Positions 243 to 60,690 of a stretch of 64,000 bases of DNA are shown piece by piece. Within the stretch, counting starts at the first letter, position 1, and each line of letters starts with the position of its first letter. Source of the DNA: Octopus sinensis (taxonomy: Eukaryota). The DNA is taken from assembly GCF_006345805.1 (NCBI RefSeq), contig NC_043003.1, positions 7,812,001-7,876,000 of the forward strand, read 5' to 3'. Under the pieces are notes generated by a model, which saw only the letters and a list, made by a program, of their open reading frames with translations, ran no database searches and had not been told where the DNA came from. Position numbers and translations under genes: made by a program.

Positions 243-246
243 ATAT

Positions 247-249
<3 letters not shown>

Positions 250-301
<52 letters not shown>

Positions 302-378
302 TACAGACAGACAGATAGATAGATAGATAGACGAACAGACAGATGGACACACTCACACACACACACACACACACACAT

Positions 379-413
<35 letters not shown>

Positions 414-418
414 TATAT
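250..418. repeat. Compound microsatellite (GATA)n/(GACA)n/(CA)n flanking the Tx1 3' end
   Basis: Direct reading: long agat/agac runs with a CA run, ending immediately before the Tx1 terminal AATAAAGAAA (minus strand). Confidence 0.95.
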
Positions 419-808
419 GTTTCTTTATTAGCCACACAGGGCTGCACACAGATAGAACAAATTACAAGGTAGAGCTTTTCTTTTGAAGGTTAAAAAAAAA
501 AAAAAAAAAAAAAAGGAAGGGGGAGTTTCGATCAAAAGGGATCGTAAAAGGAGAGAAAGAGGACAAAAAAAGGGGGGTTAAAAAAAAAAAAAAAAAAAAG
601 GGGGAGAGGAAAAAAAATGATCAATAGGGATCGTTATCACAGAAATGTCAATATGAAGTGTAAAGGGGAGGACAGGTGAGGTTACCCGTGGAAAGAAAAG
701 CCTACGGAAAAGACACGGTAACCTCGGTCAATGAAGTCACATTTTATATTTCTTTTTTTTTTTTTTTTTTTTTGCAAATAAGCAACTCTCTGTTTTCGAT
801 TTCTGGGT

Positions 809-3800
809 TCATAGGACTATGCTCAAGGTGGCTTCGTCATTCATACGTGCCATTCTTGCTACATTCACCACTTTTTTTAAAACATTCGCTAGACAAACTT
901 CCTTTCTCAACTTTCCCGGTACTTGAAGAAGTTGATGAGAGATTGACCAGAGAGGAAAGTGTTTGTCTCCAATCCTTTCAGACGCGTCCACCAGATACAT
1001 TCTTTCGCCATAGCCACAAGGATGATGAAAATAGCTCTTCCTTCCCGTTTGAAGGAAGGAGGCGTGACAATATTGACGATAGACTCAGCTGATAAACCGA
1101 CTCGTCCCACACGTGACAGCAGTTGTTCGACATAAGCCCACAGGTCGGAAATTGTTGGACACTGAACGAGTGCGTGCAGAACGGTTTCGTCGCTCTGACC
1201 GCATCTCGGGCAGGTCGGCCCCGTTTCTCGAGCCATGTCTGTAGAGCTTATCCGAACGGGTAGCGCTTCTCGGTAGCACTGCCAGGCCAGGGATCTCTGG
1301 AAGTTGTCCATGGGCCCTGGCCCGAAAGTCGTCCCGAACAGGCGGGTCAGGTACTCCTCGTCGACGTCCAGGTTCGCCCCGAGCTCGTCGTCGTACCTCC
1401 CCTCCACTAAACCCCTATAGAATGCTTTGGTTGTGTTGAAGTCACTTAAGGTCGACCCAGGACGGCAGAGTTGCTTGAGAGCAACGCGACACTCGCGGTG
1501 CCATTCGCCCTTCCTCGGCCTCTTTTGATCCACGACTGCAATTCGGTCATGGAGACGAGCTGCGGGAAAGCGTGCCTCACAAACGGCGACCACACCTGTT
1601 CACCGTCGTCTACATAGAGCCAGAGATGTCGCAGTCTCAGCGCGTGTCTGCGCATCATCAACCACGGCATGCCCAGCCCTCCTTTTAACGGGTGTTGACA
1701 GCAAATGGATCGCCTGACCATCGGGACGCATCCTTTCCACAAGAAGCGAAAGAGGATGCGTTGTAGTTTGGTGATGGTAGGGTCGGGACAAGGTACGACG
1801 GTCAGGCGGTAGTAGATGACGGACGCGATGTACGTGTTCGCCACCTCCGCTCGACCTTTTAGGGACAGTTTCCTCTCGGCCCATTGCCGGGCGAGAGTGA
1901 CCACCCTACTCGTTATCTCGTTCCAGTTCTTCTCCACTTGGAGGTCCGGACCAAACCAGACCCCGAGCAACTCAACCGGGCCGTCGGTCCAGCGTCCCAC
2001 GACGGAGGCGCTGGTGGACGGCATGGGCTTGCTTCTCCAGGTGCCTAGTCGCAAGCCCACTGACTTTTCCCGGTTGATTTTCGCTCCTGTCACCGCTTCG
2101 TAGTTTTTCAGTGTCTCGCCGACCAGCTCGATGTGCTCGTGGCTAGACACTATGACGGTGACGTCGTCCGCGTATGCAGACACGCTCGTCCCGCATCCCA
2201 ATTCTCGCGGGATGCCCCTTAGAGTCGCCAGCTTCCGCAGTAGTGGCTCAAGAGTCAATACGTATAGAAGCGCCGAGAGGGGGCATCCCTGACGGACCGA
2301 GACGACGAATGTCGAAAGGTCTCGATAGATGTCCATTTACGCGAATTACCGAACGGATGCCTCTGTACAAGGCAGCTATCCAGCCGCGGAAGACGGGACC
2401 GAAACCAGCCGCTCTCAGGACTGCCTCCAAGTATCGATGGTCTACCCTATCAAAGGCTTTCGATTGATCCAAGTTGATCAGGGCCCCACCCATGCCAGGT
2501 TCGTTAACTACCCTGTCTATGATGTAGCGCATCAGATGGAGGTTGTCATGGATGGTCCGGCCTGGCACGGCGCATGTTTGCGCCTTGTCGACCAGTTTCT
2601 CGATGACAAGCGCCAACCTCTTGGCTAGCACCTTGGCCAAAATTTTCAAGTCTGCATTAAGCAGAGTGATGGGCCTAAAGTTATCTATTACATTTCCCTT
2701 GTTTAGATCTTTCTTCAGCAGTGTTACGGCTCCTCGGCTCACAAAACCAGGAATGCTCCCGTTTTGCTGCCAGTTGCAGTACACCGCCGCCAAGAGATCT
2801 CCAAACAAGTCTGGCATACAATTGTAAAGCTCGTAGGGTAGACCATCCAAACCCGGTGATTTGTCCCTCGAGCATTCTGCCATCGCTTCCCGCACTTCCG
2901 CCGCCGTGATGGCACCTTCGCAGCACCCTGCCTTTCTTGTCGAGAGTCGTGGTATGGTATGTAGGTAGGCATGAAACCCTACCCTTCTCTCCCCTCCACT
3001 CGTTCCGAACAGTCGGGCAAAATGCTGTGCTGAAAGGCCTCACACATTTTACTTGGCTCGAGCAATTCGCGCCCCTGTTCATCTACCAGTGACCGAATGG
3101 TGGCTTTGTTGCCCTGTTGCGCCTCTGCCACCCGGGCCTCTCTCGCGGCTCCAACACCTTCGTTCCTTAGAGCACGCATCCTAGCTCTGACAGCACATCC
3201 TTCGTGTTTGGCGTTGAAGTGTTGGTCGAGGGCCAACCTCGCCGCCAAAACGTCGGATGCGATGCCGCTTCTAATTGCCTCTTCTAGCTTCTTAACTAGC
3301 TCACCCTCTACTCTATTTCTATCTATGGCTAGTGCTTTGCTGTACCTAATCGCTTCTGCTTTTACTGCTCTCTTGAGGGCAAACCACCATTTGTGTGATG
3401 ATGGCTCCCGTCAAAGCCCTCTTTACTAGTGTGCTAATCCGGTCTCTGAAAACTTGTCTCGATGGGAAAGACGCGTTTAGTTCCAGTATCCGGGACCCTG
3501 CCTAAGTGTCTTATCTAAGTCTAGCGTACATGTCACAAGTTTGTGATCCGTGTAGCTGACTATGTGGAATTGTGGACATCCTATGCTATCTCTATCTACT
3601 GTCCTACACAGTATCCTATCTAGATACGATCTCGACGACCCGATGCGGTTGCTCCATGTCCACGTTGGCGCATTCGGGTGGTCTAGTCGGAACCTGTCAG
3701 ACAGTTGAAAGCGTCTGAGCAGGTCTCTGAGGCATTTGCATCCCCGTCTATTCCTATCTCTACCCACGTAGTCTACATGCGTGTCCAAGGTAGCATTCCA

Positions 3801-4222
3801 ATCCCCCATAAGAGTAAAGGACGAGACGTTCCCAAGAAAACTTCTAGACGTTGAAAGAAATCCGCCCGACCTGTTAAGGGCGGTGCGTAAACTGATACGA
3901 GTCGAAAAGCGCACCCATTGCTGCCGTCGACATCCAGGACGACCAGTCTACCCTCCGGGTCTACGAATATTGTCCTTACATTGAGATCCAGACTCTTGTG
4001 AAAAAGTACCGCGGTGCCACTACCGCCCATTCTCGGCAGACAGGGGGAAAAATAAATGTTGAACTGTCCGCCAAACATGGTCTTTAGGGCCCGCGGATTG
4101 TGGAGTCTGGTCTCGCTTATGGCTATGATTTGTAACTTATGTGACTTTATGTCATTTAAGAGGTACCTTGTTTCCAAGGGGACCCCAAGCCACGCGCATT
4201 TACACACACCAATCTTGATCAT
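809..4222 (-). pseudogene. Tx1 ORF2 (APE endonuclease + reverse transcriptase + Zn finger), frameshifted as assembled
   Basis: Frames join across ORFs 3773-4222, 3477-3914, 2979-3248, 2248-2895, 1446-2336, 907-1593 and 809-1000. Motifs: ISETR, SVYAP, MGDWNA, YLDRI, TDHK (APE); LDQSKAFDRVDH, VRQGCPLSALLY, AYADDV (RT); CPRCGQSDETVLHALVQC. Confidence 0.92.
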
Positions 4223-4253
4223 AGTTCTAATGAATTAGAATACAGAGGGTTAC

Positions 4254-6549
4254 TTACTGCTCGAAAGTTTTTGCTTTCTCCTCCGTTGGTTTGTCCTCGA
4301 GAAGATCCCAGTACAGTTTCTTTGTGAGATATTTTTGGCATTTACCAACCGCACTGGGGAAAATGCCTTTGAGTGTGTTGCAGACTTTTGGAGATGTGTA
4401 ATATTTTGATGTGGTCTGGTGGTGTTGTGTATGGGTGATTGTGTTTTTTATGTCTCTTCTGTTATGTTGTTTTTGATTGATGTATTCCATCAAATTTGTG
4501 TTTTTGGTGTCTATGGCTGTGAGCATGTTTGCTGTATATGTTTTTGTGGTGTTGGTGTGGCTGTTGTTTGCGTTGGGTTTTGAAATGTCTTCGGGAGATG
4601 TATTTCCCCCTGCTTTGTTCGTGTTTGCATTTGGTTTGGTTGTGTTTCTGCTCTTTATTTTCCTTCTTTTTGTAGCTATTTGCCATTCCTCACTGGTTTC
4701 GTCTTCCGACGAAATTTCTGAGGAATCAGAAGGGGGTAGGGGTATGTTGTGGGCTTCTATGTATGTCTGTGTAAGTGGTTGTGTTGTTGTTTTCGTTGTT
4801 GTTGGTTGTTGAGTGTTTGTGTGTGTTGAGTGCGGTATAAGGGATGGGGGATCAGTTTGTGTGTGTTTTCTTTGTTTTTCTGTTCCTTTGGGTTTTGCTG
4901 TCGTTCTTGGTGTTGGAATTGGTTTATTTGTTGTTGGTGTGTGATGATTCTGTCTTGGCGCTGGTGTTGGTGTTGTTTGGTTGGGTTGGCTTGTTCTTTG
5001 TTGTTTTTCCTGCATTTCCGCATACAGCTTCTTGACTAGCTGTCCATATTGTGGTGTGGGCAATAATCCTGGCTTTTGTGATTTTTCCTGTGGCTGTTGT
5101 TGTTGTTGTAATTTTGCGGCAGATTTGCACTCCTTTTTGAGGTGTGCCTCACTGCCACATGTATAGCATCGTGGCCTTCTGCCCTCGACTACTACGTATA
5201 ACTTGCGGCCATCCTCAAGATGTACGTGGGTGGGGATTTTATTTATGTCCTCTTGACTTATGTGGAAGAGGAACTCTATTCTCTTTCCCAGCCAGTCCTT
5301 GTTTTCCGAAACACCGATATCTAGGATGTTTAAGTCCTCCATTTCGGATGTTAATGCGGATGTAATCCACAGTGTTGTAGTCACTTGGGGGACACCACTG
5401 ATAATGACTTTCGTCACCTTCTGGCCGAGGTAACTCGGTGTCAACGTTAGTTCATCAGAATGAAGGGTTATCGTTGGAATTCTTCGCCAACTCTTCATTC
5501 TGAAAAACCACCTGTACGTGTGCGAACTTGTTCGCCCAAGTCACACAATCCTTGTATCCCAGATGGGGCGTAAGCACTTTTCGACTTTGTCTGTGCTTGC
5601 CTTTTCTGGACTTTTTGTTTTTTTATTTGTGTTTTATATACAATTGTCTTTTTTTCTCCTCATTCAGTATGTGCTGAGGTATGTGTAAGAGTATTTTTCC
5701 GTTTTGATTTGTAATAAGGTTTCTGCAATCTTTAATCTGTTGTGTAGTAAACGAAACTTTTGTTACCTTTTCTTTTATCGCCTCGGCGAAGTTTGTTGTT
5801 GTTTTGTTATTGTTGTTACTGCCGGTGGTGTTGGTGTTGATGGCAGGGGTGTGGGTTGTAGGTTTGTGGTTGCTGATTATGCAACTAGCAAAGGGTGGAA
5901 AATTGCCTGCGTAATTTAGTCCTGCATTAGCGCAAATTTCGGCATTTCGTTTGCTTGTCGTCGTTATTTTTTCACTTGTTGGTGATGGAGTGAGCAGTGG
6001 TTGAAGGGAATTGTTGTTGTCGTCGTTGTGTTGTTGTTGTTGTTGTTGTATTGTCGTTCTTGGTGACGGCGGTGGTGTTGGTAGTATTAGTGGCATTGAC
6101 GGCACGGTCTTTGGTGGCGGTGATGGTGATGTTGGTGTTGTTATTGGTGGCGATATCTTTAGTAGGGATAGCAGTTTTAGTAGCAGATTCTGCCATGGTG
6201 TGGTGGTGGTGGTTGACTCACTGATGGTGTTGACGGTGCTTGGCCTTGCGACCTTTGTTTTGTATTTGTTGCTGTTGATGGTGGTGGAGTTGTCAGGTTC
6301 GGCGTATGCTAACAGAGCATCCTGTTTTTCTGTTTCTGCGTCACGCTTCACTTGCAACTCAGCCTCGTGGTGGCCAGTGGCGATGGTGAGTGCGGCGTTA
6401 GATTTGTTGTTGTTGTTGGTGGTGGTGGTGATGGTGGTGACAGCGGTGTTCACGCTGCGATGTTTAGTAGCCAGTGGTAGCAATAGTGTTTTGCTACCGT
6501 TCTGCATGACTGGCGGGCTAGCCACATGGTTTCTAGTTGCCATTTTCAA
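4254..6549 (-). pseudogene. Tx1 ORF1 (gag-like), split into 5623-6549 and 4254-5498 as assembled
   Basis: CYTCGSEAHLKKEC zinc knuckle (~5090-5170). The bridging frame reads ...WANKFAHVQVVFQNEELAK..., suggesting one ORF broken by indels. Extensive T/N/Q/P low-complexity sequence. Confidence 0.75.
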
Positions 6550-6769
6550 AATGAAAAATGGCTAAAAAACCCACGAAAGTTTTGAAAGTTCTTTTTGTAA
6601 TTTCGCCCATACAGGGGCGGAATTCTACGTGAATAATTCTCAGGTTTTTTAGTGAATGAACTTGCACAACGATTAAAACAAAATATTTGACAACAAGGAG
6701 TTTTAAACATGTAAAAGTGGCCAACTTACGTGGAGCCGATATGACTATCGTCCGTCCATTGTGTAGATA

Positions 6770-6790
6770 TAGACAGACAGACAGACAGAC

Positions 6791-6863
<73 letters not shown>

Positions 6864-6864
6864 T

Positions 6865-6904
<40 letters not shown>

Positions 6905-7549: not shown

Positions 7550-7690
7550 ATAATGGTGTCACTGAGACCCAAAGGTGTCAGGTAATGCTGAATAAGTGCT
7601 ATAGACAGACCATAGTTAAGTTCCAGATTCGGTAATATTGCGAATAAAAGGTTCAACATTGGTTCTATGTCACCGTGTATATTTAAGAAT

Positions 7691-7818
7691 TTTTTTGCGT
7701 AATAAGATTAAAAAAAACCAAGGCTGTATAGATATTAAAGCATTTATAGATAGGTCTTACAACTTAATGCTCTAATATCTATACAGCCTTGGCTTTTTTT
7801 ATCTTATTACGCATAAAA
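7691..7818. repeat. ~52-bp inverted repeat with ~20-bp spacer (fold-back / MITE-like)
   Basis: Left arm ttgcgtaataagattaaaaaaaaccaaggctgtatagatattaaagcatt; the right arm aatgctctaatatctatacagccttggctttttttatcttattacgcataa is its near-perfect reverse complement. Confidence 0.9.
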
Positions 7819-8183
7819 TTCTTTTATATATATATATATATACATTCATACATATATTTATATGTACATGCATTGAGGTGTAGATGCACGCATACATACA
7901 TACATACCTACATACATACATACATACATACATACATAAACGGCAGGTTCCCTAACGTCATTCCTGAAACATTGATCAAACCGCGGCTACATTTGCTGAC
8001 TGTTTCACGCAGGATCCGAACCCGCGATCGCTTGGTTGCGATGCGAACTACTTAAACATGCTGTCATTTCTGTACCTCAATTTCCATTAAATGGACAATG
8101 ATTATTATTGCATTTTTGTGTCTTTATATATAAATGCCTGTGCGTGTCTACTTGTGTGTGTGTATTTAAAAAAATTTTTTTTA

Positions 8184-9667
8184 TCTAGTTTCAGCTCACA
8201 AGCAGTGGCGCTATGCTGGGGCACTGCCATTTGGTATTGCTACATGATTTTACTTCACGTATGCTTTTTAGCAATTGCCATTTGGAGCATGAGAGAGTTC
8301 GATGCAGCTGCCCTCATCTGCACCTCCTGCCGTGAAGTTGCTTCATCTGGGATACCTGACAAGAAGTGATCCAGTTTTATTTTAAAGACATCTGCATCCA
8401 CCCCATGCAGGTCTCTTAGGTTCTTCGGGAGGATATTGAAGAGCTGTGGGCCTCGAAAGCCCAGGCTATCACAGTATCTTGTCCTACATCTTGATGGCAA
8501 ATTTGGAGTCCTTGGCACTATGCAGTGGTGCCCAGTTCTGGCATTTGTGTAACTCTCGATGCCAAAGTTTGGGACACGTCCCTCCAGGATCTTCCAGATG
8601 TATATTATGGCATATCTTTCTCGCCTACGCTCTAAGGAATAGAGTCTCAATCTCTTGAGTCTTTCTCAATAGCTTATATGCTGCATAGAAGCTATCTTCT
8701 TCGTGTAGCTTCGTTGGATCGCCTCAAGTTCTGTGTTTAACTTGACACTGGATAGTGACCATAGCTGAGAGCAATAGTCAAAGTGGCTTAGGACAAGTGT
8801 CCTCCAGAGGACCATCATGGTTTCCTGGTCTCTTGTTCTGAAGGTTCTAAGAATCCATCCGGTCAGCCGCCTACATTTCATTGTCAATTTAGCAACATGC
8901 ACATAAAAGGTTGCATCATCACTCATGTAAATACCCAGGTCTCGCACTGATTGTGCCTCTGGGATTGCAATCCCTCCAGGTCCAGTGTATTTATTGGGTA
9001 TTGCATTTAGTTTTGCATGCTGATAGCATAAAGCTTGAAACTTTTCAGCACTGAACTGCATGCTATTCTTTTCAGCCCACTTGTATATTTTGTCCAGCTC
9101 ACATTGCAGATGCATAGTGTCTTCAGGGTTCTGTATTGCCTGTGAAACTTTTGTATCATCTGCATAACTTGTGATCGTGGGTCTCTGTGTGGCTGAGGGC
9201 ATGTCTGAGAGGGCCATTATGAACAGTAGTGGTCCCAAAACAGTGCCTTGCGGAACACCGCTCACTATTTGCGTGTTAATGGAAGTGGCCCCATTGGCTA
9301 CTACCACCTGACTTCTATCCTTCAGAAAGTCATGAAGCCATTCTCCCAATTTTCCAACTATGCCAAGATCGCGCAGTTTGTGACATATCATTCCATGATC
9401 GACTTTATCAAAGGCCTTTGCAAAGTCGAAATATATGACTTCCACATTTGAGTGGTTGAGCAGTCGTTTCAGCACCCAGTCATAGTGTTGTAGGAGCTGA
9501 GTTAAGCAGCTTCTTCCTGGTCGGAAACCATGTTGGGTGTCAGGCAGCAAGTCATTTTCTTCAAGGAAGGTGATTAGTTTCCTTCTTACTATTCATTCCA
9601 TGACCTTGCTGATGTGTGAGGTCAGAGAGATAGGTCTGTAGTTCTTGGCCTCCGCTCTGCTACCTCC
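8184..9667 (-). mobile_element. 5'-truncated CR1-clade LINE (RT region plus 3' tail)
   Basis: NYRPISLTS, QHGFRPGRSCLTQLL, DFAKAFDKVDH, GVPQGTVLGPLLF, YADDT, VRDLG, YSLERRRER. Stops at ~9590 and 8666. 3' tail ...gtgagctgaaactagataaaaaaa; the 5' end abuts (TA)n. Confidence 0.9.
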
Positions 9668-9849: not shown

Positions 9850-10195
9850 TTCAAATTTTGCCACAAGGGCAGCCATTTTGGGAGGGAGGATAAATCGGTT
9901 AAATCCGAAAAGATGAAAGGTAAAATCGACCTCGGCGGAATTTGAACTCAGAACGTAACGGCAGACGAAATACCTATTTTTTACTACCCACAAGGGGCTA
10001 AACACAGAGACGACAAACAAGGACAGACAAACGGATTAAATCGATCACATCGACCCCAGTGCGTAACTGGTACTTAATTTATCGACCCGAAAAGGATGAA
10101 AGGTAAAGTCGACTTCGGCGGAATTTGAATTCAGAACGTAAAGGCAGACGAAACACCGCTAAGCATTTCACCCGGCGTGCTGCCGATTCTTTTAC
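9850..10195 (-). mobile_element. tRNA-derived SINE family M (Meta-like core), dimer
   Basis: Reverse complement of head ...agcacgccggg..., B-box-like GAGTTCAAATTCC, core GCCTTTCATCCTTTCGGGGTCGATAAATTAAGTACCAG; two units. Similarity to the Meta domain is from memory. Confidence 0.85.
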
Positions 10196-11085: not shown

Positions 11086-11462
11086 ATCGTTAGCATGCCG
11101 AGTGAAATGCTTAGCGGTATTTCGTCTGCCGTTACGTTCTGAGTTCAAATTCCGCCGAGGTCGACTTTGCCTTTCATCCTTTCGGGGTTGATTAAATAAG
11201 TACCAGTGACACATTGGGGTCGATTTAATCGACTTAATCCATTGTCTGTCTTTGTTTGTCCTCTCTGTGTTTAGCCCCTTTTGGACAGTAAAGAAATAGG
11301 TATTTCGTCTGCCGCTACATTCTGAGTTCAAATTCTGCCGAGGTCGACTTTGCCTTTCATCCTTTCGGGGTCGATAAATTAAATACCATTTGCATACTGG
11401 GTCAATCTAATCGACTGGACCCTCCCCCAAAATTTCGGGCCTTGTGCTTAGAGTAGAAAAGT
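11086..11462 (+). mobile_element. SINE family M dimer (tail A unit + tail B unit)
   Basis: Junction gtaaagaaata|ggtatttcg at ~11298; terminal tail ccctcccccaaaatttcgggccttgtgcttagagtagaaaag. Confidence 0.85.
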
Positions 11463-11799
11463 ATGTTATTTTAGTCATATTCTAATATCAATCCCCTTTA
11501 CGTTTTTCTACGCATTTCTTTGTGAAAATATTTCATTATTTGTAACAATCGATAAATGCTACATAAACAAACGCATGGACAACATCTGGGAAGACCCCCG
11601 CAGTGCGTCATAGCAGCTGAAATTTTATTTCGTTTCCAAACAATATTTCTTTGTAAAACATCTGCTAACCGCACATTCGCCATTAAATATTTGCTCATCT
11701 CAAGCAGTAGATATATCCTTCCCCTCAGACACACACACACACATACACACGCACAAAACATACAAAGACACGCACAAACACACACACAGAAACATACTT

Positions 11800-13309: not shown

Positions 13310-13872
13310 TTAAGGCGGCGAACTGGCAGAAACGTTAGCACGCCGGGCGAAATGCCGTTACGTTCTGAGTTCAAATTCCGCCGAGGTCGACTTTGCCTAT
13401 CATCCTTTCGGGGTCGATTAAATAGGTACCAGTTACGCACTGGTGTCAATATAATCGACTTAATCCGTTTGTCTGTCCTTGTTTGTCCTCTCTGTGTTTC
13501 GCTCTTTGTGGGTCGTAAAGAAATAGGTATTTTGTCTGTCTTTACACACTGAGTTCAAATTTCACCGAGGTCGACTTTGCCTTTCATCCTTTCGGGGTCG
13601 ATTAGATAAGTACCAGTTACGCACTGGGATCGATATAATCGACTTAATCCGTTTGTCTGTCCTTGTTTGTCCTCTCTGTGTTTAGCTCCTTGTGGGTAGT
13701 AAAGAAATAGGTATTTTGTCTGTCTTTACACACTGAGTTCAAATTCCGCCGAGGTCGACTTTGCCTTTCATCCTTTCGGGGTCGATAAATTAAGTACCAG
13801 TTGCATACTGGGTCGATGTAATCGACTAGTCCCAACACAAAAATTTGGAGCCTTTGAGTCTAGAGTAGAAAA
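13310..13872 (+). mobile_element. SINE family M trimer (head + A + A + B)
   Basis: Single head, then three ~180-bp units joined at aaagaaata|ggtattt (~13525, ~13710). Confidence 0.9.
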
Positions 13873-13904
13873 CAATATTTCTCTATTTTCTGTTATACAT
13901 ATAT

Positions 13905-17873: not shown

Positions 17874-18607
17874 GAGTGAGAGGGCAGTGCATGGCATCAA
17901 AGTAATACTGGGGTAAAATAAACAAAGTCCAGTATACCCATCATGACTACCCGTCTGATAAGGTTATACCAGGCACATGCATCACAACCATAAGTGCGCG
18001 ATATAGTGATCTCATATCAAGATAAACAGCGCATCATCTTGCATGTGAGGCCCAGTTAGAATTTTCTTCAGGTTGAGAAGCCTATCCCGCTCAAAAGGCC
18101 CCTGAATAAAGGTTGTTTAAGGATGTTGAACGAAATACCCATGTTTCCAAAGGTGAATTATTCAAACTCCAAAGACTTCTAAACACATGCCTGTGATGCT
18201 CCCCACTACCTCTGCTCGTGATCAGAGATGCACATATTGTCAGCCACTAAGGGACATGCTCAACTGGTTAAGGTCAAACAACTGACAAGCGGAATTTGAA
18301 CTCACGTCTGCCGTTACGTTGTGAGTTCAAATTCCGCCGAGGTCGACTTTACTTTTCATCCTTTCGGGGCCGATAAATTAAGTACCAGTTACGCACTGGG
18401 GTCGATGTAATCGACTTAATACCTATGTCTGTCCTTGTTTGTCCCCTCTATGTTTAGCCCCTTGTGGGTAATAAACAAATAGGTATTAAGCAGAATATTT
18501 GCTGTAGCCCATCTTTTATACCAAGACAAAACAATGTACATGACACCACTTCCAATCAGTTAAGATCGGAAGCCGCGATAGCCACAACCTGGTACAGCAT
18601 CAGGACA
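17874..18607 (-). mobile_element. Unclassified ~555-bp non-coding element, copy 1, interrupted by a family M SINE (18289-18481)
   Basis: End-to-end reverse-complement match to 43917-44471 once the SINE is removed; flanked by (TAG)n and (TTA)n. The strand is assigned by analogy only. Confidence 0.85.
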
Positions 18608-25770: not shown

Positions 25771-28223
25771 TAAGGTGGTGAGCTGGCAGAATCGTTAGCA
25801 TGCCGGACAAAAGACTTACCGATATTCCGTCCGTCCTTACGTTCTGTGTACAAGTTCTACCGAGGTCGATAAAATAAGTCCTAGTTGAGCAGTGGAGTCG
25901 ATATAATCGACTTCATCCCTTCCCCGAAATTGCTGGCTTTGTGCTAAAATTTGAAATCATCATTATTATTATCAATATTTATATTTATACTTTCAACATT
26001 GAATGATCATTTATTTTAATCTCATCTCTGTAAACTATTTAATTCAGTATTAGCCAAAATTTTATCCGTTTTTCTTTGGATATTATAATTGTATTGAAAT
26101 TAAATATAATCAGATAGTGTAGGTAAACTCGTTTAATGTATTTCCTTAGAAATATATTAGTATACAATCAAATTTAACAAGATCGAGTGCATTCAAATGT
26201 AAGAAGAATATTGGACAGTAGGACACAAAAATGCATGCATCTTATGATCTAATGTCGTTTACAGTAATTTACGTGATTTTTGCATATGTTTAGGACCAGA
26301 ATATTATCTCTGGACTATTTCCGCAATGACAGATCTTCTCACGTTCGAATACACTCAGCGTGTTAAATACGATTCTATGCAAATAAATTTTATTCAACGC
26401 TGCTTCTTTTGTGCAACACAATTTATTGAATTCTAGCGCCACCAATTTTTACGCACACCAGCAAATGTACCCCATGTGGTTTTAATAAATGATACTTTCT
26501 TGAATTACGGATTTGGTGTGGGCAGCCGATGCATTAACGGTCCATAATGTATTTTTCCCATAGGTCTTCTCGGAAGAGAACTTTTTCCCAGGGATTATAT
26601 TTACATCGAAAGGTCTTCTCGCGTTCGAATGCACTCGAATATGTCAAGCAGGACTTTACCCAAACATATTTTATTGAATGCTGCTTCGTGTGTCATTATT
26701 TATCCAACAGAAATATATTTAATTTTTACGTATATTTAAAATTACTCTCTTAAAATGTTTTGGTCTACTCGGTAGACCAAGAACTAGGAAAGATGGACGA
26801 TATCCAAAGCATCAGTTGGAATCCAGTCAGAAAGTGTAATGATGACGGTTGCTTCTGACAGAACCCTATGAAGAGGGTGCCTGAGGATTCTAACCCCCAC
26901 GCCCACACCAGTATTAGTGGGCGGAGAAAACGGGTAGATAAATAAGAAAACAATATTAAAGCTCTACCCCGAAGTTTTGAATTTTATCTCTTCATGCATA
27001 GAGCAAAATATTCTGTTTATCATCTTTATTAGCCTCATCACCTCTACTCTAGTCTTCAAAATTTCCCATTTGCTTCTCATTTAGTTAGTCTATCAATTTT
27101 CTTCCCAATTCTTTCTAAACTTCCACTTTTATTCTTCTCAAGAATTTTATTTTGTTATTTTATTATTCTTTGTCTTCTTGTAACTCTTATTATTATGTCT
27201 ATTTTTTTTTTCAGAAACGAAAACAAAAAACACTAGTTTCTTTGAAATTTTAAATTCTTTTCTCATATTTCTTTTATCTTCAAAATTTTTGATTTTTTTC
27301 TTAGTTCGATTATTTTTCATTGCCTTTAGTCTATGATTTCCGAAAATTATGTATCTTCTGCTCTATAATACTGTTTCATTTCTCTCTTAATAGTTATTGC
27401 TAAAGCAGCAGCATAAAATATATTATCTATATTTATATTTCTACATTTTTGTATCATTCAAATAATTATAGTGTGGCGGCAGTGAACCCACCTCATGAAT
27501 ATTCTTTTGTTTGTAGAAAGATATCTTAACCTTTTGTTTATATTTTTACCTTATAGCTTCAAATTTACATATTCAAATTTAAATTGCTTCTACCTTAATT
27601 CCTAAAGCCATCTCGCCATTTATTTTTCAAGGTGCTTTCGTGTTTTTACTGTTGTTTGTAGCAGTCATTGGCTTCTACTAGCTTCGCCATTACCTATGGT
27701 AATGTTTTTGGCTTCGAACATTAGGCGCTTACAACTAAGCAAATCTTTTCTATTTCTTCCTTTGAGTTTTCTGGTTATCTAACCTTGAATTGATAAACTA
27801 TAAACGACAGCCATCACCGAAAAATTTACTGGCATTATCGATCTTTAATTGAAGAATTCTTCCATGCCGTTGGCTTTAGTTTGTCATAGATAATGGTTTG
27901 GATTGGAATAATAGTAAAACGAGCGCTAAGATGAAGTGAGTGAAGATGTTAATTAATTAATATACTGTAATGAAGAAAAAAAAGTATCTATAAAGAAGAC
28001 AACTATAGTGAAGAGAAAAAGAGAGAATATTCAAATCATAAATTCTAGATACGAAATTCAGAGGAGACAGGCCTAAAATTAAATATAGAATTAGATATAG
28101 AAGGGAAACCACGATGCCGCGGGTTTAATTGCAAGCACCCTGACAACTCAGCCTTCACTTTCGGCTTTAGTTTATGCTTACAATTTCCTTGGTGTTTTTT
28201 TGTGTCTAATAAAAAGAACGGAT

Positions 28224-28490
28224 AAGGCGGCAAGCTGGCAGAAACGTTAGCACGCCGGGCGAAATGCTTAGCGGTATTTCGTCTGCCGTTACGTTGTGAG
28301 TTCAAATTCCGCCGGGGTCGACTTTGCCTTTCATCCTTTCGGGGTCGATAAATTAAGTACCAGTTACGCACTGGGGTCGATGTAATCGACTTAATACCTA
28401 TGTCTGTCCTTGTTTGTCCCCTCTGTGTTTAGCCCCTTGTGGGTAATAAAGAAATAGGTATTTCGTCTGCTGCTACGTTCTGAGTTCAGT
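28224..28490 (+). mobile_element. SINE family M monomer plus start of a second unit
   Basis: Complete head; tail A ...agccccttgtgggtaataaagaaata|ggtatttcg (junction 28456/28457). Confidence 0.9.
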
Positions 28491-31427: not shown

Positions 31428-32048
31428 TAAGGCAACGAACTGATAGAAACGTTAGCACGCCAGACGAAATTATGCTTAGCGGTATTTCGTCTGCCGCTAC
31501 GTTCTGAGTTCAAATTCCGCCGAGGTCGACTTTGCCTCTCATCATTTCGGGGTCGATTGAATAAGTACCAGTTACTGGGGTCGATATAATCGACTTAATC
31601 CGTTTGTCTGTCCTTGTTTGTCCTCTCTGTGTTTAGCCCCTTGTGTGCAGTAAAGAAATAGGTATTTCGTCTGCCGCTAAGTTCTGAGTTCAAATTCCGC
31701 CGAAGTCGACTTTGCCTTTCATATTTTCGGGGTCGATTAAATAAGTACCAGTTACGCACTCGGGTCGATGTAATCGACTTAATCCCTTGTCTGTCCTTGT
31801 TTGTTCCCTTTATGTTTAGGCCCTTGTGAGCAATAAAGAAATAAGAAACGTCAGCACGCCGGGCGAAATTAAGCTTAGCGGTTTTTCGTCTGCCTTTACA
31901 TTCTGAGTTCAAATTCCACCGAGGTCGACTTTGCATGTCATCCTTTCTGAGTCGATAAATTAAGTACCAGTTGCGTACTGGGGATCGATCTAATTCACTG
32001 GACCCTTCCCCCAAATTTCGGGCCTTGTGCTTAGATTAGAAAAGAATA
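31428..32048 (+). mobile_element. SINE family M trimer
   Basis: Junctions aaagaaata|ggtatttcg (~31660) and aaagaaata|agaaacgtcagc (~31845); terminal tail B. Confidence 0.9.
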
Positions 32049-32471
32049 TAAAGGATTATTACTGTTGCTGTTCTTCTTCTTGTTATAATCATTATTATTG
32101 CATGTAAAGCTGGTTAATTCCCTTCCTTTGCAACGACAATCACGTAATGCCTGCTTTAGCACGTAATCTCCGTATGGTTCCGTTTCTGTCGGTCTTAGGA
32201 CCCAGGTGTTAAATGGAAGCTAATTAATCGATTTGAGGAGAAGAAAGAACGAAAAGAGAAAACCTCATACCTAACGATATTCCTGATATCATCTAATTAA
32301 TTATTGAATAGCAACAGGGGAGGTGGTAATATTAGTACAGAGTGATGGTAGTGGTGATAATGGTGGTGGTTGGTGGTGGTGGTGGTGGTGGTTGCAGCGG
32401 TAGAAATATGGGTGGTGATGATGGAGTAGTAGTAGTAGTATTAGTAGTAGTAGTAGTAGTAGTAGTAGTAA

Positions 32472-41581: not shown

Positions 41582-41975
41582 TAAAAGGCGTCGAGCTGGC
41601 AGAATCGTTAGCACGCCGGGCGAAATGCTGAGTGGTATTTCGTCTGCCGTTACGTTCTGAGTTCAACTTACACCGAGGTCGACTTTGCCTTTCATCCTTT
41701 CGGGGTCGATAAAATAAAGTACCAGTTACGCACTGGGGTCGATGTAATCGACTTAATCCGTTTGTCTGTCCTTGTTTCTCGCCTCTGTGTGTAGCCCCTT
41801 GGGAGTAGTACAGAAATAGGTATTTCGTCTGCTGCTAAGTTCTGAGTTCAAATTCTGCCGAGGTCGACTTTGCCTTTCATCCTTTCGGGGTCGATTAAAT
41901 AAGTACCAGCTACGCTCAGGGGTTGATATAATCGACTTAATCCGTTTGTCTGTCCTTGTGGGTAGTAAAGGAATA
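41582..41975 (+). mobile_element. SINE family M dimer with 16-bp TSD
   Basis: GGTTATTGAGGCAGAA at 41566-41581 and 41976-41991; both units end in tail A (the second is internally deleted). Confidence 0.92.
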
Positions 41976-49271: not shown

Positions 49272-49660
49272 AGGCGGCGAGTTGGCAAATTCGTTAGCAG
49301 GCCGACAAAATGCTTAGCGGTATTTCGTTTGCCGTTATGTTCTGAGTTCAAATTCTGCCGAGGTCGACTTTGCCTTTCATCCTTTCGGGGTCGATAAATT
49401 AAGTACCAATTACGCACTGGGGTCGATGTAATCGACTTAATCCGTTTGTATGTCCTTGTTTATCCCCTCTATGTTTAGCCCCTTGTGGGTAGTAAAGAAA
49501 TAGGTTTTTCGTCCGCCTTTACGTTCTGAGTTCCAATTCCACAGAAGTTGACTTTGACTTTCGTTCTATCAGGGTCGATAAAATAAGTACCACTTGAGCA
49601 ATGGGGTCAATGAAGTCAAATTACCCCTTCCACAACATTGCTGATCTTGTGGAAAAATTC
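49272..49660 (+). mobile_element. SINE family M dimer
   Basis: Junction aaagaaata|ggtttttcg into an older unit at ~49502. Confidence 0.85.
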
Positions 49661-60097: not shown

Positions 60098-60690
60098 GGT
60101 GAGCTGGTTGAAACGATAGCACGCCGGGCGAAATGCTTAGCGGTATTTCGTCTGCCGCTACGTTCTGAGTTCAAATTCCGCCGAGGTCGACTTTGCCTTT
60201 CATCCTTTCGGGGTCGATTAACTAAGTACTAGTTACGCACTGGGGTCGATGTAATCGACTTAATACCTATGTATGTCCTTGTTTGTCCCCTCTGTGTTTA
60301 GCCCCTTGTGGGTAGTAAAGAAATAGAAATAGGTATTTCGTCTCTGCCGCTACGTTCTGAGTTCAAATTCCGCCAAGGTCGATTTTGCCTTTCAACCTTT
60401 CGAGGTCGATAAATTAAGTACCAGTTACGCAGTGTGGTCGATATAATCAACTTAATCCGTTTGTCTGTCCTTGTTTATCCCCTCTATGTTTAGCCCCTTG
60501 TGGGCAATAAAGAAATAGGAATCGTTACCATGTCGGACTAAATGCTCAGCGGCATTTCGTCCGTCTTTACGTTCTGAATTCACATTCTGCCGATGTAGAC
60601 TTTGCCTTTCAATCTCGACGTCGGTAAAATATGTACTAGTTAAATATACGATCAATGTAACTGACGCGCCCTTTCTCTTCAAAAGTGCTT
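60098..60690 (+). mobile_element. SINE family M multimer within a cluster of older copies (59714-60090)
   Basis: Junctions aaagaaatagaaata|ggtatttcg (~60332) and aataaagaaata|ggaatcgtta (~60518). Confidence 0.85.

What the first reader, a model, noticed from the sequence alone, without database searches (positions are those of the whole stretch)
420..455. SINE family M tail A is homologous to the extreme 3' end of the Tx1 LINE
Tx1 ends (minus strand) TCTGTGTGCAGCCCTGTGTGGCTAATAAAGAAA. The SINE tail at 28422-28454 reads TCTGTGTTTAGCCCCTTGTGGGTAATAAAGAAA: 28/33 identical, ungapped, both terminating at the same point (seen). Shared 3' ends are the classic sign of SINE-LINE partnership (established mainly for CR1/L2/RTE). 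A Tx1-clade partner would be unusual, and would let the SINE borrow a possibly sequence-specific endonuclease (inference).
Basis: partly seen in the sequence, partly recalled or inferred. Interest (0 to 1): 0.85.

Follow-up and report, generated by a model that had tools for sequence, protein, structure and literature searches.

The report
Octopus SINE tail borrowed from LINEs
The last ~50 bases of a very abundant short repeat (SINE) in the Octopus sinensis genome match the conserved 3' end of a group of L1/Tx1-type LINEs, so those LINEs probably copy the SINE, although the LINE in this window is a cousin of the best-matching one rather than the best match.

Summary
The LINE on the minus strand ends at 420-452 with the quoted 33-mer. 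The SINE 33-mer at 28422-28454 is 28/33 identical to it (27/33 for the commoner genome variant). Homology covers about 47-50 nt and stops at AAAGAAA (local score 40-45; shuffles 14±2).

Genome-wide, the LINE 33-mer has 9,107 copies; 30 of 30 sampled sit at 5'-truncated LINE 3' ends. The SINE 33-mer has 143,675 copies, with TSDs and 5' truncation.

This LINE is not the closest match. Sister families in the same genome have ORF2 57% identical, open over at least 1,112 aa, and about 63 tails. All 20 sampled tails score higher (50-67), and in the best the last 31 nt, including the SINE terminus GAAATAG, are identical.

The window's family sits inside (TCTA)n microsatellites. Well under 1% of SINE tails do.

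In Argonauta hians, SINE and LINE tails share Argonauta-specific changes, which points to a working partnership within this LINE clade.

The Tx1 label rests on published RTclass1 and tree classifications of this genome. My own pairwise test was inconclusive.

Verdict: a real SINE-LINE tail pair and a new member of a known kind; the named partner needs revising.

The parts
420..452 (-). 3'-terminal 33-mer of the LINE (family A), the sequence quoted in the finding
   Evidence: Exact match. 9,107 genome copies at <=2 mismatches. 30/30 sampled copies lie at LINE 3' ends.
420..469 (-). About 50 nt of LINE 3' module homologous to SINE tail A (CCTTGTAATTTGTTCTA + 33-mer)
   Evidence: Local alignment of 47 columns plus a 3-nt gap, score 40-45 against shuffles 14 +/- 2. 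A small hairpin AGCC/GGCT is predicted.
420..6761 (-). Full-length but frameshifted L1/Tx1-type LINE: ORF1 with CCHC (4254-5540), APE endonuclease (3477-4234), RT (1446-3039), zf-RVT (907-1599), 3'UTR 420-906
   Evidence: ORF list. Pfam Exo_endo_phos, RVT_1, zf-RVT, zf-CCHC. An open copy elsewhere (P0001, 1108 aa) best matches human L1 ORF2p, 1e-46, against R2 at 1e-19. The 5' junction was read.
243..419 (.). (GATA)n = (TCTA)n microsatellite flanking the LINE 3' end; on the element's strand it reads CATA(TCTA)n
   Evidence: Sequence. The same junction is seen in 28/30 genomic copies.
6762..6900 (.). (TCTA)n/(TCTG)n/(TC)n microsatellite directly upstream of the LINE 5' end
   Evidence: Sequence. 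5'-truncated copies elsewhere abut (TCTA)n in most truncated copies sampled.
28225..28456 (+). SINE copy with tail A (head and core 28225-28392, tail A 28393-28456). It is followed by a fragment of a second unit (28457-28488).
   Evidence: Sequence. blastn map of SINE units in the window.
28408..28456 (+). LINE-derived module of SINE tail A (CCTTGTTTGTCCCC + 33-mer + TA)
   Evidence: The terminus GAAATA was fixed by comparing TSDs.
9976..10008 (-). Tail-A 33-mer of another SINE copy
   Evidence: 3 mismatches.
13675..13707 (+). Tail-A 33-mer inside a three-unit SINE array (13313-13827)
18447..18479 (+). Tail-A 33-mer of a 5'-truncated SINE monomer (18305-18487)
31626..31658 (+). Tail-A 33-mer in a multi-unit SINE array (31445-31994)
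41586..41975 (+). Two-unit SINE ending in tail A, flanked by the 15-bp TSD GTTATTGAGGCAGAA
   Evidence: Sequence. It shows that tail A can be the functional 3' terminus.
49468..49500 (+). Tail-A 33-mer of a SINE copy (49272-49508)
60291..60515 (+). Two tail-A 33-mers (60291-60323 and 60483-60515) in a SINE array

Best explanation
Tail A of this SINE is a LINE-derived 3' tail of about 47-50 nt, (CC)TTGTTTGTCCCC TCTGTGTTTAGCCCCTTGTGGGTA(A/G)TAAAGAAA-TA. It is homologous to the conserved 3'-terminal module of one clade of L1-superfamily LINEs in octopods, classified as Tx1 in the literature. The SINE RNA presents this module to the ORF2 protein (endonuclease plus reverse transcriptase) of LINEs of that clade, which nicks a target and reverse-transcribes the SINE from its 3' end. 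That would account for the TSDs and 5' truncations. The LINE in the window (family A) targets (TCTA)n microsatellites and carries a diverged version of the module. The most likely mobilisers of most Octopus copies are low-copy sister families (family B) whose tails match the SINE up to and including its terminus. Shown: homology, co-terminal ends, retroposition hallmarks, closer tails in sister families, and SINE and LINE tails changing together between Octopus and Argonauta. Inferred: recognition of the module by ORF2p, direction LINE to SINE, which family is the mobiliser, and the Tx1 assignment.
For: Homology: 28/33 ungapped; 47 columns, score 40-45 against shuffles 14 +/- 2. The LINE terminus is genuine: 9,107 copies; 30/30 co-terminal, 13 reaching more than 1.5 kb into ORF2 and the rest 5'-truncated at varied points. 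SINE: 143,675 tails; TSDs of 11-20 bp and 5'-truncated copies, terminus GAAATA; a 27-nt tail-only insertion with a 16-bp TSD. Sister families: a zf-RVT scan found 23,363 first-look candidates, and among the 150 scored were many long open frames, up to 1,126-1,140 aa. Their 3' ends carry ...GCCCCTTGTGGGTAATAAAGAAATA, with local scores of 58-63 for four of the six tested. 63 tails match a family-B pattern. 20/20 sampled score 50-67 against 45 for family A; the best is 44/49 with the last 31 nt identical. ORF2 is 57% identical to family A, and both best match human L1 ORF2p. The module is old in the LINE lineage: an Argonauta hians LINE, 65% identical in ORF2 to family A, ends TCTGTGTCGGCCCTTGTGGCTAATAAAGAAATCTAT. 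Co-variation: Argonauta SINE copies end ...CGGCCCTTGTGGCTAATAGAGAAATCTAT. Over the last 36 nt each species' SINE is closer to a LINE of its own genome (33/36 and 34/36) than to the other species' SINE (28/36).
Against: No experiment shows trans-mobilisation. Family-B tails are few (63) against about 144,000 SINE tails. Some family-B copies sit in the same repeated target, while the SINE is dispersed. Other LINE clades were not searched exhaustively for similar tails; I checked about 300 kb of sampled DNA and the CR1-like LINE in the window. The Argonauta comparison rests on one 10-kb locus. A few hundred SINE copies carry the family-A type terminus GAAACATA, so family A may also act on the SINE. 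Tx1 membership was not confirmed by my own comparison.
Confidence: 0.8

Rival explanations
1. One reading: the (TCTA)n-targeting family A in the window is the LINE that mobilised the bulk of the tail-A SINE copies.
For: It has the highest copy number of the clade (9,107 tails) and young copies 96-98% identical to the window copy. A minority of SINE copies end with its own terminus GAAACATA(TCTA)n or lie inside (TCTA)n on both sides (L144, L146-L149, L151; about 520 pattern hits). The Argonauta relative of family A has the tail that matches the Argonauta SINE. LINE variants with G at position 22 exist (L140-L143, L145).
Against: Six fixed differences and a 3-nt indel separate the two tails, and no intermediates exist (0 hits). 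All 20 sampled sister-family tails are closer. Most SINE copies end GAAATA, not GAAACATA. 0 of 44 sampled terminal SINE copies lie in (TCTA)n. Only 66 exact G-type tails are followed by (TCTA)n, against about 3,500 one-mismatch hits, about 30 of the 34 listed being LINE-type.
Confidence: 0.13
2. The resemblance is chance similarity between two T/G-rich, AATAAA-containing ends.
For: Both ends contain a polyadenylation-like AATAAA and low-complexity TG runs.
Against: Score 40-45 against a shuffle maximum of 27. The same module sits at the 3' end of several LINE families and in a second species. SINE and LINE tails co-vary within species.
Confidence: 0.01
3. The direction is reversed: the LINEs picked up the tail from the SINE, for example by a SINE inserting at their 3' end or by template switching.
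For: The SINE is far more numerous. Template switching between the homologous tails probably does occur, because SINE bodies with a LINE-type terminus exist.
Against: The module is present with family-specific upstream sequence at the end of LINE families only 57-65% identical in ORF2, and in Argonauta, so it was probably in their common ancestor. No SINE core sequence precedes it in any LINE copy.
Confidence: 0.03
4. Tail A is an internal segment, and the SINE moves through another tail (tail B) or another unrelated LINE.
For: 37% of tail-A sequences are followed by another unit, and several arrays in the window end in tail B.
Against: Many monomers and dimers end exactly at GAAATA and are flanked by TSDs. 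A 27-nt tail-only insertion has a 16-bp TSD.
Confidence: 0.03

Closest known systems
UnaSINE1 / UnaL2 of the eel (L2 clade), the experimentally proven 'stringent' SINE-LINE pair (Kajikawa and Okada 2002, as cited in PMC3747384 and PMC4494074)
   Same: A short shared 3' module with a small predicted stem-loop, followed by a short terminal repeat. The SINE is proposed to be recognised in trans by the LINE's RT.
   Different: A different LINE clade (L1/Tx1 type, not L2). Here there is no experiment. The terminal repeat differs between SINE (TA) and LINE family A (CATA(TCTA)n).
SINEU / Tx1-Mar in crocodilians (Kojima 2015, PMC4494074)
   Same: A SINE proposed to be mobilised by Tx1-clade LINEs. 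The LINEs are target-specific.
   Different: There the case rests on a shared insertion target and shared 5' heads, and SINEU ends in poly(A). Here SINE and LINE share a specific 3' tail, and the SINE does not share family A's target.
L1-clade SINE/LINE tail pairs (maize/sorghum SINEs; Chlamydomonas SINEX-3_CR / L1-1_CR; Ohshima 2012/2013, PMC3472496, PMC3747384)
   Same: Rare cases in which an L1-superfamily LINE shares a specific 3' end with a SINE. Only 3 of 58 surveyed pairs were of this kind.
   Different: Those are plants and algae, with poly(A)-ended tails. This is an animal lineage ending in non-A repeats.
Kibi, Koshi and crocodilian Tx1 families that target (TC)n, (TTC)n, (TTCC)n (Kojima and Fujiwara 2004, via PMC4494074)
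   Same: An APE-type LINE found inside one microsatellite type on both flanks.
   Different: The target here is (TCTA)n, and the host is a mollusc.
Octopus tRNA-derived SINEs OK, OR1, OR2 (Ohshima and Okada 1994, cited in PMC4758252)
   Same: Abundant octopus SINEs. This family may correspond to one of them.
   Different: I could not compare sequences, because that paper is not in the library. No LINE partner for octopus SINEs turned up in the literature searches.

Membership tests
SINE-LINE pair with a common 3' tail (stringent type) | Significant sequence similarity confined to the 3' ends of SINE and LINE | tested here: met
   47-49 aligned columns ending at AAAGAAA(TA). Score 40-45 for family A and 50-67 for family B, against shuffles 14 +/- 2.
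SINE-LINE pair with a common 3' tail (stringent type) | The shared sequence is the true terminus of both elements | tested here: met
   LINE: 30/30 co-terminal copies. SINE: TSDs begin directly after GAAATA. Family B ends GAAAT(A/C)(A/G).
SINE-LINE pair with a common 3' tail (stringent type) | The SINE shows retroposition hallmarks (TSDs, 5' truncation) | tested here: met
   TSDs of 11-20 bp, with starts anywhere from position 1 to 139 of the SINE. A 27-nt insertion has a 16-bp TSD.
SINE-LINE pair with a common 3' tail (stringent type) | An autonomous partner with an intact ORF2 in the same genome | tested here: met
   Family B has an open frame of at least 1,112 aa with EN, RT and zf-RVT. Family A has a 1,108-aa open ORF2 in a 5'-truncated copy. 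The window copy is frameshifted.
SINE-LINE pair with a common 3' tail (stringent type) | Overlapping periods of activity | tested here: inconclusive
   Young copies exist on both sides: LINE copies 96-98% identical to the window copy, and SINE copies 97-98% identical to the window copy. The samples were chosen by exact tail match, so no age distribution was computed.
SINE-LINE pair with a common 3' tail (stringent type) | Tail-dependent trans-mobilisation by the LINE protein | not testable with these tools
   This needs a retrotransposition assay.
Tx1 clade of non-LTR retrotransposons | The RT domain groups with reference Tx1 elements rather than L1 in a phylogeny (or by RTclass1) | tested here: inconclusive
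   BLASTP: P0001 and P0122 are 22-25% identical both to a bivalve L1-Tx1 consensus and to human L1 ORF2p. Published support: O. sinensis L1-superfamily clusters are Tx1 by RTclass1 and, in the ML tree, lie next to the clade holding Tx1_XT and KoshiTn1 (PMC10294476 Table S5, Data S1). I did not verify that my families are among those clusters.
Tx1 clade of non-LTR retrotransposons | L1-superfamily architecture: APE endonuclease, RT, C-terminal zinc-binding motif; ORF1 with a zinc knuckle | tested here: met
   Pfam Exo_endo_phos, RVT_1, zf-RVT, and a weak zf-CCHC in ORF1. The best solved relatives are human L1 ORF2p, 1e-46 and 2e-68.
Tx1 clade of non-LTR retrotransposons | Sequence-specific insertion, reported among APE-type LINEs only for Tx1 and R1 (PMC13295347) | tested here: met
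   Family A has (TCTA)n on both sides. Family-B copies share identical 3' flanks in two groups.
tRNA-derived SINE | The head is recognisable as a tRNA with A and B boxes | tested here: inconclusive
   Rfam gives no hit at E<=1 on 28200-28480. A B-box-like GAGTTCAAATTCC and an A-box-like TAGCGGTAT are visible by eye only.

The most novel reading that the evidence does not exclude
In this LINE clade, target choice is set largely by base pairing between the last few nucleotides of the template RNA and the nicked DNA, not by the endonuclease alone. Family-A RNA ending in CA(UAUC)n lands in (TCTA)n. SINE RNA ending in UA, or read through to UAGGUAUU from a downstream unit, lands at sites that begin GGTAT, GATAT or TATAT, or in (TA)n. 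Rare SINE RNAs that acquired CATA(TCTA)n land in (TCTA)n. One protein recognising one conserved 3' module could then be steered to different targets by swapping the terminal repeat. The SINE and LINE tails co-evolve or are exchanged between families of the clade.
Probability: 0.25. Interest if true: 0.7.

Novelty: new member of a known kind. Interest (0 to 1): 0.5.

Why it matters
SINEs are reported to be among the largest repeat classes in octopus genomes: 11.6% of O. vulgaris (PMC13282606) and the main transposon class in O. bimaculoides and O. vulgaris (PMC8967140). This one tail occurs about 144,000 times, yet I found no published autonomous partner for octopus SINEs. A shared, specific 3' tail with L1/Tx1-type LINEs names candidate drivers of the SINE expansion. 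It also adds an animal example of specific 3'-end sharing in the L1 superfamily, where such pairs are rare (3 of 58 surveyed). Family A, family B and the SINE together form a natural set for testing how a site-specific LINE treats a parasite RNA.

Tried and rejected
1. Intermediate tails within family A (LINE-type AAT indel plus SINE-type TTTAGCCCC): 0 genome hits.

2. Own-genome protein search with a distant homologue (P0005) to find other families failed four times. A Pfam zf-RVT family search replaced it and worked.

3. Clade naming from database names: two large homology searches returned almost no informative names.

4. Pairwise test of Tx1 against L1, using a bivalve L1-Tx1 consensus taken from PMC10294476 Data and human L1 ORF2p taken from the PDB alignment. 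Identity was the same (about 24%) to both, so it is uninformative.

5. The CR1-like LINE at 8255-9592 as an alternative partner: no tail similarity to tail A or tail B.

6. Rfam on the SINE head: no tRNA hit.

7. A scan of all fetched DNA (about 300 kb) for the shared motif in other contexts found only SINE, family A, or truncated copies of them.

8. RNA hairpin: both tails fold into a small hairpin at the same place (-5 to -7 kcal/mol). The stem is short and the register shifts, so I do not count it as covariation evidence.

Full report
**What is at the coordinates.**

The window is G000:C7:7812001-7876000 of a 2,719,151,902-bp genome. That size is identical to Octopus sinensis GCF_006345805.1 as listed in PMC10294476 Table S1.

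The quoted LINE 33-mer lies at 420-452 on the minus strand with no mismatch. The SINE 33-mer lies at 28422-28454 on the plus strand, and seven more copies in the window have at most 3 mismatches. Neither occurs in shuffled sequence. The ungapped identity is 28/33, as stated.

**The LINE.**

The minus strand from about 6761 to 420 holds a full-length but frameshifted non-LTR retrotransposon:
- ORF1 with a weak CCHC knuckle, 4254-5540
- APE-type endonuclease, 3477-4234
- reverse transcriptase, 1446-3039
- zf-RVT, 907-1599
- a 487-nt 3'UTR

The 33-mer occurs 9,107 times in the genome at <=2 mismatches. In all 30 sampled loci it is preceded by this LINE's 3'UTR. In 28 of 30 it is followed by CATA and then (TCTA)n. 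Thirteen of the 30 align more than 1.5 kb into ORF2, and the rest are 5'-truncated at different points, as expected for LINE copies. So the 33-mer is the true 3' end of this family, which I call family A.

An open 1,108-aa ORF2 from another copy (P0001) best matches human L1 ORF2p among solved structures (1e-46). R2 proteins follow at 1e-19.

**An unexpected property of family A.**

The 5' junctions of most truncated copies sit directly on (TCTA)n. The full-length window copy has (TCTA)n on both sides, at 243-419 and 6762-6900. A few older copies lie in unique DNA with ordinary TSDs (L015). Family A is therefore a (TCTA)n-embedded, target-specific LINE.

**The SINE.**

The SINE 33-mer, allowing A or G at position 25, occurs 143,675 times. 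The commoner form has G, which gives 27/33 against the LINE.

In 70 sampled copies:
- 26 run straight into a further SINE unit that starts at position 49 of the SINE.
- 44 are terminal.

Comparing 5' and 3' flanks of terminal copies shows TSDs of 11-20 bp that begin directly after ...AAAGAAATA.

TSDs mostly start GGTAT, GGTAA, GATAT or TATAT, and several copies lie in (TA)n. Many copies are 5'-truncated. One insertion of only 27 nt of tail has a 16-bp TSD. Tail A is thus a working 3' terminus of a LINE-mobilised retroposon.

**Extent and significance of the homology.**

A local alignment of consensus tails gives 47 columns plus one 3-nt indel, from CCTTG to AAAGAAA. The score is 40 with the young LINE subfamily and 45 with an older one, against 14.2 +/- 2.2 (maximum 27) for 2000 shuffles. 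Chance is excluded. Both tails are predicted to form a small hairpin at the same place, but that evidence is weak.

**Is this LINE the partner?**

Three results say it is not the main one.
1. No intermediates exist. A pattern joining the LINE-specific indel to the SINE-specific TTTAGCCCC has 0 genome hits.
2. The SINE does not share the LINE's target. None of the 44 terminal copies lies in (TCTA)n. Genome-wide, only 66 exact G-type tails are followed by three TCTA units, and some of those are LINE variants. About 3,500 one-mismatch hits exist, and about 30 of the 34 listed are LINE-type.
3. Closer tails exist elsewhere in the genome, as described next.

**The closer tails (family B).**

A zf-RVT scan of the genome gave 23,363 first-look candidates. 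Among the 150 scored were many long open frames, up to 1,126-1,140 aa, with better zf-RVT scores than family A. I fetched eight of their 3' regions. Seven of the eight end ...GCCCC(T/A)(T/A)GTGGGTAATAA..., and two of those end GCCCCTTGTGGGTAATAAAGAAATA. Local scores against the SINE were 58-63 for four of the six tested.

A pattern specific for this tail has 63 genome copies. All 20 sampled score 50-67, against 45 for family A. The best (L139, L130, L129) match 44/49, with the last 31 nt, TTAGCCCCTTGTGGGTAATAAAGAAATAG, identical to the SINE and including the SINE's own terminus.

One such element has a frame open over at least 1,112 aa (P0122). It is 57% identical to family A over 1,053 residues, and it also best matches human L1 ORF2p (2e-68).

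Several family-B copies share identical 3' flanks in two groups. One group's shared flank begins with the tandemly repeated sequence seen downstream of L116. These families therefore also look target-specific.

**Comparison with another octopod.**

A LINE of Argonauta hians (P0003, locus L108) is 65% identical in ORF2 to family A and 56% to family B. It ends TTCTGTGTCGGCCCTTGTGGCTAATAAAGAAATCTAT.

Four SINE copies in the same 10-kb locus end ...TTCTGTGTTCGGCCCTTGTGGCTAATAGAGAAATCTAT. They share the Argonauta-specific CGGCCC, GGCTAAT and terminal ATCTAT.

Matches over the last 36 nt:

| Comparison | Matches |
|---|---|
| Octopus SINE vs Octopus family B | 33 |
| Octopus SINE vs Octopus family A | 29 |
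| Argonauta SINE vs Argonauta LINE | 34 |
| Octopus SINE vs Argonauta SINE | 28 |

SINE and LINE tails therefore change together within each species. That is what a functional partnership, or repeated tail exchange, predicts. It also shows that the module is ancestral to the LINE clade. This rests on one locus.

**Traces of family A acting on the SINE.**

Among tails followed by CATA(TCTA)n, four of nine sampled were SINE bodies ending in the LINE-type GAAACATA(TCTA)n. Two 5'-truncated SINE tails lie inside (TCTA)n on both sides. About 520 SINE-type tails carry GAAACATA, mostly followed by (TA)n. That is about 0.4% of copies. It is compatible with occasional mobilisation by family A, or with template switching between the homologous tails.

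**Is it Tx1?**

My own test was inconclusive. Both octopus ORF2s are 22-25% identical to a bivalve L1-Tx1 consensus and to human L1 ORF2p alike.

Indirect support:
- The architecture is L1-superfamily.
- Insertion is sequence-specific, which among APE-type LINEs is reported only for Tx1 and R1 (PMC13295347).
- Published work on this very assembly assigns its L1-superfamily RT clusters to Tx1 by RTclass1. Its ML tree places them next to the clade holding Tx1_XT and KoshiTn1, apart from the L1 references (PMC10294476 Table S5 and Data S1).
- O. vulgaris and coleoid repeat annotations list L1-Tx1, and the passages retrieved show no separate L1 class (PMC13282606, PMC8967140).

I did not verify that my families are among those clusters.

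**What is known.**

Shared SINE/LINE tails are a classic finding, mostly in CR1, L2 and RTE. Only 3 of 58 surveyed pairs involved L1-clade LINEs (PMC3747384). A Tx1-SINE partnership has been proposed for crocodilian SINEU and Tx1-Mar, on shared targets and heads with a poly(A) tail (PMC4494074). Microsatellite-targeting Tx1 families (Kibi, Koshi and others) are also known. Four literature searches found no description of a LINE partner for octopus SINEs. Repbase entries could not be checked.

**Verdict.**

The SINE tail derives from the 3' module of an octopod L1/Tx1-type LINE clade. The window's LINE is a member of that clade but probably not the main mobiliser in Octopus; low-copy sister families fit better. 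This is a new member of a known kind, of moderate interest.

Noticed in passing
window 243-419 and 6762-6900; loci L004-L026, L061-L066: The LINE family in the window is embedded in (TCTA)n microsatellite on both sides, in the full-length copy and in most 5'-truncated copies. It behaves as a microsatellite-specific LINE with a target, (TCTA)n, that is not among the Tx1 targets listed in the papers read.
   Followed up: partly
window 13313-13827, 31445-31994, 60102-60642; G000:C1:8970295-8971818: SINE units form head-to-tail arrays. After tail A (..GAAATA) the sequence resumes at position 49 of the SINE (GGTATTTCGTCTGCC). 26 of 70 sampled tails continue this way, and one place has at least 7 units spaced about 185 bp apart. 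The junction is always the same, which suggests read-through masters or template switching at TAGG/TAGCGG.
   Followed up: partly
window 11299-11470, 13710-13880, 31844-32060: A second SINE tail (tail B: ..GGACCCTCCCCCAAAATTTCGGGCCTTGTGCCTAGAGTAGAAAAGAAT) closes several arrays that begin with tail-A units. Its LINE partner is unknown.
   Followed up: no
loci L032-L104: SINE target-site duplications begin non-randomly with GGTAT, GGTAA, GATAT or TATAT, and several copies lie in (TA)n on both sides. GGTAT equals the start of the next SINE unit in arrays, as if the RNA 3' end pairs with the target.
   Followed up: partly
L144, L146, L147, L148, L149, L151 (G000 places): A small set of SINE copies ends with the LINE-type terminus GAAACATA(TCTA)n, or lies 5'-truncated inside (TCTA)n. 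These may be rare mobilisation by the window's LINE family or RT template switching between the homologous tails.
   Followed up: partly
L120/L123/L126/L128 and L116/L125/L127: Copies of the sister LINE family share identical 3' flanking sequence in two groups. One group's shared flank begins with the tandemly repeated sequence seen downstream of L116. This suggests sequence-specific insertion by these families too.
   Followed up: no
L061, about 1181 on the reverse strand: An insertion of only 27 nt, (tc)GCCCCTTGTGGGTAATAAAAAAT(ca), is flanked by the 16-bp direct repeat ATTGCTGTATCTTTTG. It is an extremely 5'-truncated retrocopy of the tail.
   Followed up: no
L108 (Argonauta hians BAAFZT010000001.1:9783835-9793847), 6013-6650 and 7620-9309: The Argonauta LINE 3' region is present twice in tandem with different tail variants. 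Four SINE copies nearby carry the Argonauta-type tail ending GAAATCTAT.
   Followed up: partly
window 480-790 (minus strand 3'UTR): The LINE 3'UTR holds three long T runs (A runs on the plus strand) and a CGATC..GATCG inverted repeat. The lengths of the T runs differ between copies.
   Followed up: no
window 8255-9592 (minus): A fragment of a second, unrelated LINE: RVT_1 and a CR1-like C-terminal region. Its 3' region shows no similarity to tail A or tail B.
   Followed up: partly
window 28200-28480: Rfam finds no tRNA or other family in the SINE head at E<=1. The tRNA origin is not detectable by this test; only box-like motifs are visible by eye.
   Followed up: partly
L063, L065, L067 against window 4920-6761: Other long copies of family A align with the window copy only downstream of window position 4920. 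The 5'UTR and N-terminal ORF1 region differ between subfamilies.
   Followed up: no
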